Positions 51,021 to 51,437 of a stretch of 64,000 bases of DNA are shown piece by piece; positions within the stretch are counted from its first letter, which is position 1, and the number at the start of each line of letters is the position of its first letter. The stretch covers positions 28,515,998 to 28,579,997 of the forward strand of contig NC_069001.1 in the NCBI RefSeq assembly GCF_001194135.2, in the 5' to 3' direction. The notes under the pieces were generated by a model. The model was not told where the DNA came from, did no database searches, and worked only from the letters and a program-made list of their open reading frames with translations. Position numbers and translations under genes: made by a program. The DNA is from Octopus bimaculoides. Taxonomy: Eukaryota.

Positions 51021-51049
51021 TTGTTTTTTCTTTCTCTTTACAGGTGAGT
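51021..51049 (+). promoter_or_regulatory. Candidate recursive splice site (3'ss directly abutting 5'ss)
   Basis: ttgttttttctttctctttaCAG|GTGAGT, with AG at 51042-51043 and GT at 51044-51045, in unique sequence. Confidence 0.55.
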
Positions 51050-51437
51050 CTCATTTTCATTCTTCTCAAAATGAAAATAATCAACTGTAAACACAACTTT
51101 TATTTTCCTATTCTGTTTGGACCTGTTGCATAACATTTCCCTATCGCATATGGCTCTTCCGGTAACGTATATAATTTTAGTAAAAAGGTTTCTGAAAAAG
51201 TTATATGTATAGGCATATACATACATGTCTGCGTGCGCGCGTTTGTGTGTGTGTGGGTGTGTGTTTGCACGCTTTTGTGTATGAATGTGCGCGTGTGATT
51301 GCGTTTGTGTGTATGCGCGTGTGCGGTTCTGTGTGTGTATGTATATGTGCATAGATTTTCTGAGGTATTCAGGATTTGGATAAGGACTTCGGCCTCTACA
51401 GGGATTGATCATCAATAGATCAGAGACATTTCATACG

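What the first reader, a model, noticed from the sequence alone, without database searches (positions are those of the whole stretch)
51021..51080. Near-perfect recursive-splicing (ratchet point) motif in unique sequence
Seen: a roughly 20-nt almost pure pyrimidine tract, then CAG, then immediately GTGAGT. There is no plausible coding exon on either side, and the flanks are AT-rich and intron-like. A small hairpin (attttcatt-cttctcaa-aatgaaaat) lies just downstream of the donor. Established: zero-length-exon ratchet points with AG|GTRAGT subdivide long introns in Drosophila, and RS-exons do so in long vertebrate neuronal genes. I am not aware of this being characterised in cephalopods. Inference: a long + strand intron is spliced stepwise here.
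Basis: partly seen in the sequence, partly recalled or inferred. Interest (0 to 1): 0.78.

Follow-up and report, generated by a model that had tools for sequence, protein, structure and literature searches.

The report
Candidate recursive splice site, unproven
A textbook back-to-back "end of intron / start of intron" signal really sits at 51016-51049 and is kept in three related species, but no RNA data show it is transcribed or used, so stepwise splicing here is a reasonable but untested idea.

Summary
On the + strand there is a 22/24 pyrimidine tract (51016-51039), then ACAG (51040-51043), then GTGAGT (51044-49), in single-copy, non-coding, AT-rich sequence. A motif this strict is expected about 0.003 times per 64-kb window, which still means roughly 100 chance copies in a genome of about 2.5 Gb.

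Support for function is modest:
- CAG|GTGAGT is unchanged in contigs from three related organisms. The listed tract changes remove purines or add pyrimidines.
- In one lineage no listed difference falls in 50957-51065 (P about 0.02).
- Two weaker AG|GTAAGT sites lie on the same strand (32189/90, 54186/7) and none on the other.

The decisive evidence is missing. I found no gene, no exon and no + strand transcript in the window. Three poly(A) RNA-seq runs (6% sampled) and four contig sets gave no read, junction or loose end at the site. The hairpin exists but is no better than chance.

My estimates:
- used recursive site: about 0.35
- unused chance motif: about 0.35
- ordinary or cryptic exon boundary: about 0.15
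- conserved non-splicing element: about 0.10

I found no paper describing recursive splicing in cephalopods or molluscs. Interest is low to moderate until total or nascent RNA is mapped.

The parts
50957..51015 (+). AT-rich block upstream of the tract with few listed differences in relatives. It holds two yUnAy branch-point candidates: TTAAT with A at 51009 (34 nt before the AG) and with A at 50986 (57 nt). It also holds several TAAT/ATTA cores.
   Evidence: Searches list no difference for 50957-51018 in any related contig. One search gives the motif positions. Mismatches near contig ends are not all listed, so 'no difference' is a lower bound.
51016..51039 (+). Polypyrimidine tract, 22 of 24 C/T.
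   Evidence: Listed changes in relatives are G>C at 51019, a 2-nt deletion at 51022-23, T>C at 51031 (X20), a CTT insertion after 51019 and G>T at 51023 (X41). All remove purines or add or keep pyrimidines.
51040..51043 (+). ACAG, a 3' splice-site-like acceptor. The only other AG after the 51009 branch candidate is at 51014-15, 5 nt from it.
   Evidence: A>G at 51040 in X20 keeps CAG.
51044..51049 (+). GTGAGT, a 5' splice-site-like donor directly abutting the AG. CAG|GTGAGT matches all 9 positions of MAG|GTRAGT.
   Evidence: No listed change in X18, X19, X20 or X41.
51053..51078 (+). 9-bp A/U stem with an 8-nt loop. Probably not functional.
   Evidence: Fold z = -0.22. Changes at 51071, 51076 and 51078 in relatives give only G-U wobbles or a broken end pair, none compensatory.
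51044..51161 (+). Possible cryptic RS-exon of 118 nt (not a multiple of 3, contains stops), ending at the candidate downstream donor CCG|GTAACG at 51162. A 43-nt alternative would end at ACT|GTAAAC (51087).
   Evidence: The 51087 GT becomes GC in X18, X19 and X20 (T>C at 51088). The 51162 GT is kept in X19 and X20. This is inference only.
54168..54192 (+). Second, weaker juxtaposed motif: CGTTTTATTTGCCTACAG|GTAAGT.
   Evidence: Its conservation and use were not tested.
32160..32196 (+). Third + strand site: TTGCTCATTTCTTCTGTAG-TACGTTTCGGAG|GTAAGT. A strong acceptor and a strong donor are separated by 12 nt, which looks like a micro-exon or exon end. An ATG lies at 32147.
   Evidence: Essentially no poly(A) RNA depth there.

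Best explanation
The site is most likely a recursive splice site (ratchet point) in a long + strand intron of a gene whose exons lie outside, or undetected inside, this window.

Proposed mechanism:
1. U2AF/U2 recognise the tract, the CAG and a branch point near A51009.
2. An upstream exon is joined to 51044.
3. That join places GTGAGT directly after the exon, regenerating a 5' splice site.
4. This new site is used to remove the rest of the intron, so nothing from here remains in the mRNA.
5. By analogy with flies, recognition may use a cryptic RS-exon that ends at a weak downstream donor (51162, or 51087 in this species).

Shown: the motif, its rarity, its single-copy status, and its retention in relatives.

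Inferred: every step that involves RNA. That includes + strand transcription, the upstream donor, use of the site, and the RS-exon.
For: - The motif matches (Y)nNCAG|GTRAGT at every constrained position. There is 1 hit against 0.04 expected, and the strict form is expected about 0.003 times per window.
- The branch-point candidate sits at a typical distance, and no competing AG lies in between.
- CAG|GTGAGT has no listed change in four contig sets from three other organism labels, representing three lineages. All five listed changes inside the tract keep or raise its pyrimidine content.
- The longest run free of listed differences, 50957-51065 in X19, contains the motif (permutation P = 0.018; X18 P = 0.025).
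- AG|GTRAGT preceded by at least 12/20 pyrimidines occurs 3 times on the + strand and 0 times on the - strand, against 0.17-0.35 expected per strand (P(>=3) <= 0.003 in Markov simulations).
- Shepard et al. 2009 (PMC2773006) report 4- to 22-fold sense-strand enrichment of such sites in long introns of five invertebrates.
- Fly ratchet points have ultraconserved SA|SD motifs and poorly conserved cryptic exons (PMC8605326). Fly recursive sites are about twice as conserved as control AGGT sites (PMC6110457).
- Libraries the tool guesses to be RNA (X15, X17) have their only locus-specific contigs of 50500-51600 at 51188-51438. X17 and X28 hold 0.24 and 0.19 of the words of 51070-61000, but at most 0.10 of the words of 42500-50950. 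A saw-tooth step would look like this.
Against: - No + strand gene or transcript was shown. I found no exon in the about 18 kb laid and no coding signal anywhere in the window.
- There are zero reads, joints or loose ends on 50860-51225 in X24-26 and in X15, X17, X28, X14.
- No further RNA run in the index holds any sampled word of 50500-51600. The 'RNA?' runs X15 and X17 hold words only at 51188-51438, downstream of the motif.
- Conservation is weak evidence. X20 alone is not significant (P = 0.13, and 0.10 for the block). A 9-mer intact in three lineages is expected 6-19% of the time.
- The best-conserved part is the 60 nt upstream of the tract, not the motif. Some mismatches near contig ends in the tract may be unlisted.
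- The same-strand cluster was noticed after the fact and depends on the threshold. At 14/20 or more it is 2 versus 0, and at 16/20 or more it is 1 versus 0.
- The 32.19-kb site is not zero-length.
- The coverage step could equally be a transcription start, a - strand gradient, GC bias or noise.
- About 100 such motifs are expected by chance in a genome of this size.
Confidence: 0.35

Rival explanations
1. It is a chance juxtaposition that is never used. A T-rich low-complexity tract happens to be followed by CAGGTGAGT in intergenic or antisense-intronic DNA. The core's retention in relatives reflects low divergence and local rate variation.
For: - Roughly 100 chance copies are expected per genome at this stringency.
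- No transcription was detected at the site in any RNA data laid.
- No gene was found in the 64 kb.
- Listed divergence to relatives is only 4-8 events per 100 nt, so an intact 9-mer is unremarkable.
- T-rich tracts evolve by slippage, which by itself tends to erase purine interruptions.
- T-rich tracts are common here. Many unrelated contigs match 50991-51063 at about 83%.
Against: - The expectation is only 0.003 per window.
- The 109-nt run free of listed differences around the motif has P about 0.02.
- Two further AG|GTAAGT sites lie on the same strand and none on the other.
Confidence: 0.35
2. It is an ordinary splice-site use rather than a recursive one. Either GTGAGT is the donor of an unannotated, rarely expressed first or alternative (non-coding) exon ending at 51043, with the conserved AT-rich block as its promoter or exon. 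Or the acceptor opens a cryptic or poison cassette exon (51044 to 51086 or 51161) that is sometimes included. A dual-specificity AG|GURAG site belongs in this class too.
For: - Both half-sites are individually strong.
- Conservation extends about 85 nt upstream of the AG, further than a tract and branch point need.
- A TATAA-like string lies at 50973-50977.
- Coverage in the libraries guessed to be RNA appears only downstream of the site, and word shares are higher downstream than upstream, as expected if a transcript starts here.
- Candidate downstream donors exist.
Against: - No RNA run in the index holds any word of the putative exon(s).
- There are zero poly(A) reads on 50860-51225.
- 50957-51043 has stops in all frames and is 85% A+T, with a T-rich 3' end, which is unlike an exon.
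- The 51087 donor is lost in relatives.
Confidence: 0.15
3. It is a conserved non-coding DNA element, such as an enhancer or transcription-factor site cluster with TAAT/TAATTA cores. It acts at the DNA level and merely overlaps a splice-like string.
For: - The stretch free of listed differences in all relatives is 50957-51018. It is rich in TAAT/ATTA cores (positions 50957, 50970, 50975, 50982, 50984, 51007, 51009).
- It lies upstream of the motif rather than on it.
- No RNA was found at the site.
Against: - TAAT cores are expected by chance in sequence that is 85% A+T.
- Conservation is only nominally significant, and in one lineage only.
- This reading does not explain the pyrimidine-preserving changes in the tract or the other same-strand AG|GTAAGT sites.
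Confidence: 0.1

Closest known systems
Drosophila intronic ratchet points (zero-nucleotide-exon recursive splice sites; Hatton 1998, Burnette 2005, Duff 2015, Joseph 2018, as summarised in PMC8605326, PMC6110457 and PMC2773006)
   Same: The consensus (Y)nNCAG|GTRAGT is identical. The setting is non-coding, AT-rich and exon-free. The SA|SD core is kept in relatives while the sequence just downstream (the would-be RS-exon) diverges. A weak donor lies downstream. Any included exon would be out of frame and full of stops. Nothing from the site appears in RNA assemblies.
   Different: No host intron, no sense-strand transcription, no junction or lariat reads and no saw-tooth have been shown here. 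The conserved stretch extends about 60 nt further upstream than the tract. I found no paper describing recursive splicing in cephalopods or molluscs.
Vertebrate RS-exons in long neuronal genes (Sibley 2015; PMC6110456)
   Same: A 5' splice site would be regenerated after the first step. A downstream donor may define an RS-exon. The genome is large and long introns are plausible.
   Different: In vertebrates the motif is not enriched on the sense strand (ratio 1.0-1.5; PMC2773006), so motif-only predictions are mostly false there. Which regime this genome follows is unknown. No RS-exon inclusion product has been seen here.
Dual-specificity splice sites
   Same: The same juxtaposed AG|GTGAG core is present.
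   Different: That class is defined by two annotated isoforms that use the site in opposite roles. No isoform of any kind is known here.
Conserved non-coding elements / enhancers
   Same: It is a short block, about 60-110 nt, with fewer changes than its flanks, in non-coding DNA and with no RNA detected.
   Different: Significance is marginal. Changes inside the tract look constrained for base class (pyrimidine) rather than for exact sequence. That suits an RNA signal better than a protein-binding DNA site.

Membership tests
Intronic recursive splice site / ratchet point | Juxtaposed acceptor and donor: pyrimidine tract, NCAG, then directly GTRAGT | tested here: met
   22/24 Y, then ACAG|GTGAGT at 51016-51049. 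There is 1 hit against 0.04 expected.
Intronic recursive splice site / ratchet point | Lies on the sense strand inside a long intron (in flies, the longest few percent of introns) | tested here: inconclusive
   No gene, exon or stranded transcript was found in the window. A 64-kb exon-free stretch fits either a giant intron or intergenic DNA. Three same-strand motifs against none on the other strand is only a hint.
Intronic recursive splice site / ratchet point | Splicing intermediates: reads joining an upstream exon to the first base after the AG, and lariats with a 5' end at the regenerated GT | tested here: inconclusive
   There are zero reads, joints or loose ends on 50860-51225 in X24-26 (about 12 million reads each, 6% of each run) and in contigs of X15, X17, X28 and X14. 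The data are poly(A) or of unknown type and are too shallow to count as absence.
Intronic recursive splice site / ratchet point | Saw-tooth intronic coverage in total or nascent RNA, with a step at the site | tested here: inconclusive
   Only coarse word shares are available. X17 and X28 hold 0.24 and 0.19 downstream against at most 0.10 upstream. The first locus-specific contigs lie at 51188-51438. There is no strand information, the library type is unknown, and other causes are possible.
Intronic recursive splice site / ratchet point | SA|SD motif conserved well beyond its flanks | tested here: inconclusive
   The core is unchanged in X18, X19, X20 and X41, and tract changes keep pyrimidines. 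The downstream flank diverges (10-13 events in about 100 nt). The 60 nt upstream are equally conserved. P = 0.018 (X19) and 0.13 (X20). Chance retention of the core is 6-19%.
Intronic recursive splice site / ratchet point | Cryptic RS-exon with a downstream donor (about 50 nt in flies, variable), poorly conserved and out of frame | tested here: inconclusive
   Candidate donors lie at 51087 (43 nt; the GT is lost in three related contigs) and at 51162 (118 nt; kept in two). Both are weak. There is no functional test.
Intronic recursive splice site / ratchet point | Absent from mature mRNA | tested here: met
   None of the other listed RNA-run assemblies (X27-X39) holds any sampled word of 50500-51600. 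X15 and X17 hold words only at 51188-51438. There are no poly(A) reads. This is trivially true also for untranscribed DNA.
   z = -0.22 (+ strand) and -0.85 (- strand). There is no Rfam match in the whole window. No compensatory changes were seen.
Transposable element / repeat-borne motif | Further copies in the window or genome | tested here: not met
   blastn of 50900-51120 against the window finds only itself. Related-species contigs over the locus have ordinary single-copy depth. Only the T-rich tract attracts unrelated contigs.

The most novel reading that the evidence does not exclude
The + strand of this window is the sense strand of an intron of at least 30 kb in a neuronal or developmental gene. 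That intron would be removed in several steps at conserved ratchet points (51043|51044, perhaps 54186|54187, and a 12-nt micro-exon-like site at 32179-32190). This would be the first evidence that recursive splicing operates in a cephalopod, and so in Lophotrochozoa. It would extend the mechanism beyond flies and vertebrates to a third lineage with very long introns.
Probability: 0.3. Interest if true: 0.55.

Novelty: new member of a known kind. Interest (0 to 1): 0.3.

Why it matters
Recursive splicing has been shown experimentally in flies and vertebrates. Motif enrichment suggests it is widespread in invertebrates (PMC2773006). I found no study of it in cephalopods or any mollusc. These genomes are large and rich in repeats, and the nervous-system genes of such animals are where long introns and recursive splicing would be expected.

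One verified site, together with a genome-wide sense/antisense count of the motif, would show whether cephalopods handle long introns as flies do (many ratchet points) or as vertebrates do (few). It would also give a landmark for annotating giant introns.

As it stands this is one good-looking motif with mild comparative support. It is a lead, not a result.

Tried and rejected
- **Reads on 44000-54000.** I then mapped safe stretches.
- **Poly(A) RNA raw reads.** On 50860-51225, 46925-51440, 57490-64000 and 31000-38120, only SINE and microsatellite reads from other loci appeared, in both orientations. There was no exon and no GT..AG joint.
- **The 32147-32190 'first exon' idea.** ATG...GAG|GTAAGT shows essentially no depth, and read-through hits a stop at once, so it is unsupported.
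- **Same-organism DNA contigs (X1).** None were laid on the 366-nt stretch although the run holds 95% of the words. Long contigs carrying microsatellites were probably filtered. Raw DNA reads (X21-23) did cover the site, with no listed difference.
- **Word shares in relatives as a conservation baseline.** Shares were 0.10-0.16 in the flanks against 0.07-0.08 around the site. They are confounded by shared SINE and microsatellite words and so are not usable.
- **Coding search.** I tried six-frame stop-free segments, an amino-acid likelihood ranking, a splice-aware exon scan and Pfam on the ten best candidates. Nothing was convincing. The TM-like peptide at 32271-32327 is a TTG/GTT repeat artefact.
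- **RNA structure.** The whole-window Rfam scan gave 0 families. Folding of both strands showed no excess stability.
- **Exact look-up of the 125-aa - strand ORF over the site.** It is not on record.
- **Concatenated pseudo-protein search.** I decided against spending the large protein-database searches on this. The prior of hitting a real exon was low and word-index candidates would explode.

Full report
**1. What is there**

On the + strand the sequence reads TTTGTTTGTTTTTTCTTTCTCTTT (51016-51039, 22/24 pyrimidines), ACAG (51040-43), GTGAGT (51044-49). This fills every constrained position of the ratchet-point consensus (Y)nNCAG|GTRAGT quoted in PMC2773006.

A yUnAy branch-point candidate (TTAAT, A at 51009) lies 34 nt upstream of the AG. 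The only intervening AG (51014-15) is 5 nt from it, too close to compete (the exclusion-zone argument is general knowledge).

**2. Setting**

The window is AT-rich (GC about 0.29-0.39 outside the gap-rich 40-44 and 54-56 kb bins). It is a scaffold with 17 N gaps and is full of microsatellites and SINE-like copies.

**3. Is the motif more than chance?**

- Y8NCAGGTRAGT with up to 1 mismatch occurs once, against 0.04 expected.
- CAGGTRAGT alone occurs twice, against 0.69 expected.
- For the strict form I estimate about 2e-8 per position per strand. This combines P(CAGGTRAGT) = 3.4e-6 with the 0.66% of positions that are preceded by at least 18/20 pyrimidines.
- That is about 0.003 per window, but about 100 chance copies in a 2.5-Gb genome (the genome size is my assumption).

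The motif is therefore rare locally but not self-validating in a genome scan.

It is single-copy. It is present in independent DNA runs of the same organism: studies dated 2015 and 2022 hold 93-95% of the sampled words, and 2025 runs hold 61-76%.

**4. Structure and coding**

- There is no Rfam family anywhere in the window.
- Folding of 50950-51085 is no better than shuffles (z = -0.22 and -0.85).
- The hairpin's 3' arm changes in every related lineage, giving only wobble or broken pairs. The hairpin is real but unremarkable.
- No coding evidence appears on either strand near the site or elsewhere. There are no Pfam hits for the ten most protein-like segments.

**5. RNA**

The index lists no RNA run holding the site. 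Only X15 and X17 (guessed to be RNA) hold 14-19% of the words of 50500-51600. Those words are explained by exact contigs at 51188-51438.

Three 2026 poly(A) RNA-seq runs were each sampled at about 6% (about 12 million reads). They give zero reads on 50860-51225. In 46925-51440, 57490-64000 and 31000-38120 they give only reads on SINE or microsatellite pieces, in both orientations. There are no exon-like pile-ups and no GT..AG joints.

Contigs of X15, X17, X28 and X14 do not touch 50860-51187.

So there is no evidence for + strand transcription, for junctions or for lariats. Equally, the data are not of the kind or depth that could exclude an intronic intermediate.

A coarse asymmetry exists:
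- X17 and X28 hold 0.24 and 0.19 of the words of 51070-61000, but at most 0.10 of the words of 42500-50950.
- X17 has exact low-depth contigs over about 27% of 57490-64000, against about 11% of 31000-38120 and less in 46925-51187.

This is what a saw-tooth step at 51044 would give. A transcription start, a - strand gradient, GC bias or noise would give the same, and the libraries carry no strand information.

**6. Relatives**

At 80% likeness, short contigs from three other organism labels cover the site:
- B: X18
- C: X19, which is nearly identical to X18, and X20, which is a distinct lineage
- D: X41

None shows a listed change in CAG|GTGAGT (51041-49).

Listed changes within the tract are:
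- G>C at 51019
- deletion of 51022-23
- T>C at 51031
- a CTT insertion after 51019
- G>T at 51023

All of these remove purines or add or keep pyrimidines. A>G at 51040 hits the unconstrained N of NCAG.

Downstream, 51065-51166 carries 10-13 events per about 100 nt. Upstream of 50957 there are several indels.

The longest run free of listed differences is 50957-51065 in X19 (permutation P = 0.018) and 50957-51070 in X18 (P = 0.025). In X20 it is only 50957-51018 (P = 0.13), and X20 has 5 of its 27 events inside the block (P = 0.10).

With 6-12% divergence per lineage, a 9-mer intact in three lineages is expected 3-19% of the time.

Caveats:
- The tool does not list every mismatch (for example 1 of 7 for the X41 contig).
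- In B/C two contigs abut at 51009-51029, so some tract differences may be hidden.
- The best-conserved part is the AT-rich 60 nt upstream of the tract, not the motif itself.

Conservation is therefore mildly supportive of constraint, and compatible with a splice signal, but not specific to one.

**7. A same-strand cluster**

AG|GTRAGT preceded by at least 12/20 pyrimidines occurs at 32189/90, 51042/3 and 54185/6 on the + strand and nowhere on the - strand. The expectation is 0.17-0.35 per strand, with P(>=3) <= 0.003.

This matches the sense-strand enrichment reported for invertebrate long introns (PMC2773006). However, I noticed it after the fact and it weakens at stricter tract thresholds.

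The 32.19-kb site is really a strong acceptor and a strong donor 12 nt apart. I had no read-laying runs left to test the conservation of the other two sites.

**8. Weighing**

If the + strand is transcribed through here behind any 5' splice site, sites this strong would almost certainly be used. The question therefore reduces to gene context, which I could not obtain.

I start from the share of a gene-sparse genome that is sense intron on a given strand, roughly 0.15-0.2 (my assumption). I then apply modest likelihood ratios for conservation (about 3) and for the same-strand cluster (about 2). This puts 'used as a splice site' near 0.5.

| Reading | Estimate |
|---|---|
| Recursive site | about 0.35 |
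| Ordinary or cryptic exon boundary, or first-exon donor | about 0.15 |
| Unused chance motif | about 0.35 |
| DNA-level conserved element | about 0.10 |

**9. Comparison and novelty**

The closest known system is the Drosophila intronic ratchet point with its cryptic RS-exon (PMC8605326, PMC6110457). The motif feature is met. All RNA-based defining features are untested or inconclusive, so membership is not established.

No paper in the searchable library deals with recursive splicing in octopus, cephalopods or molluscs. Searches gave 0, 1 incidental and 2 incidental co-mentions. If real, this would be a new member of a known kind in a new phylum.

**10. Verdict**

- Observation: confirmed.
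- Hairpin: not supported as functional.
- Interpretation: cannot be judged with the data reachable here.
- Interest: low to moderate.

Noticed in passing
window 54168-54192 (+) and 32160-32196 (+): Two more juxtaposed acceptor/donor-like sites lie on the same strand as the finding, and none on the - strand. They are CGTTTTATTTGCCTACAG|GTAAGT and TTCTTCTGTAG-(12 nt)-GAG|GTAAGT. The second could be a 12-nt micro-exon or an exon end preceded by an ATG at 32147.
   Followed up: partly
window 42500-50950 versus 51070-61000: Libraries guessed to be RNA (X17, X28) and several of unknown type (X16, X42) hold about twice as many words downstream of about 51 kb as upstream. DNA runs differ by only about 10%. 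This could be a transcript start, a saw-tooth step, a - strand gradient or bias.
   Followed up: partly
window 47378-47679, 49920-50245, 32904-33141, 36236-36473, 58362-58579, 59452-59887, 62068-62285, 62940-63375: Short interspersed repeat copies attract hundreds to tens of thousands of RNA reads or contig depth in both orientations, with many variant positions. They are abundant transcribed SINE-like families. Two families recur in the window: peptide signatures ...PEAIVEDTCPRCHAVGLNPEP... (3835-4188, 13439-13851, 36251-36400, 47373-47620, 56452-56682) and ...LAESLAHREKCLVVFRL... (11555-11713, 49919-50125, 55850-56008).
   Followed up: partly
window 19132-19314 (+) and 45396-45674 (-): Two stop-free segments (...KYKDLEIEISKMW...VVIDALG... 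and ...ISCPADVNIKPK...FIPVLIAALG...) resemble, from my memory, the C-terminal region of a retrotransposon ORF common in invertebrate genomes. Pfam gave no hit, so this is unverified.
   Followed up: partly
window 1302-55506 (17 N runs; the largest are 39865-40715 and 41622-42473): The window is a gapped scaffold with 3447 N in all. One 25-nt gap (51480-51504) lies 430 nt downstream of the finding, between a (TA)19 run and a (TATG)n array with a 44-nt period (51505-51800). Distances across it are uncertain.
   Followed up: no
window 51230-51345: An imperfect GT/GC-rich microsatellite (GC about 0.48) lies directly downstream of the site. It creates a spurious 125-aa - strand ORF (51038-51415) that overlaps the motif. 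The ORF is not on record as a gene.
   Followed up: yes
window 50860-51225 (tool behaviour): DNA runs of the same organism that hold 95% of the region's 31-mers yielded no laid contig, whereas short contigs of relatives were laid. Long contigs carrying microsatellites were probably dropped by the human-likeness filter. Raw DNA reads (X21-23) matched at only 95-99%.
   Followed up: no
window 50860-51225, related contigs X18/X19 versus X20: Two runs carrying the same organism label (C) give clearly different orthologous sequences. X19 is almost identical to organism B's X18, while X20 shares only 3 of about 20 differences with them. This suggests a mislabelled run or a species complex.
   Followed up: no
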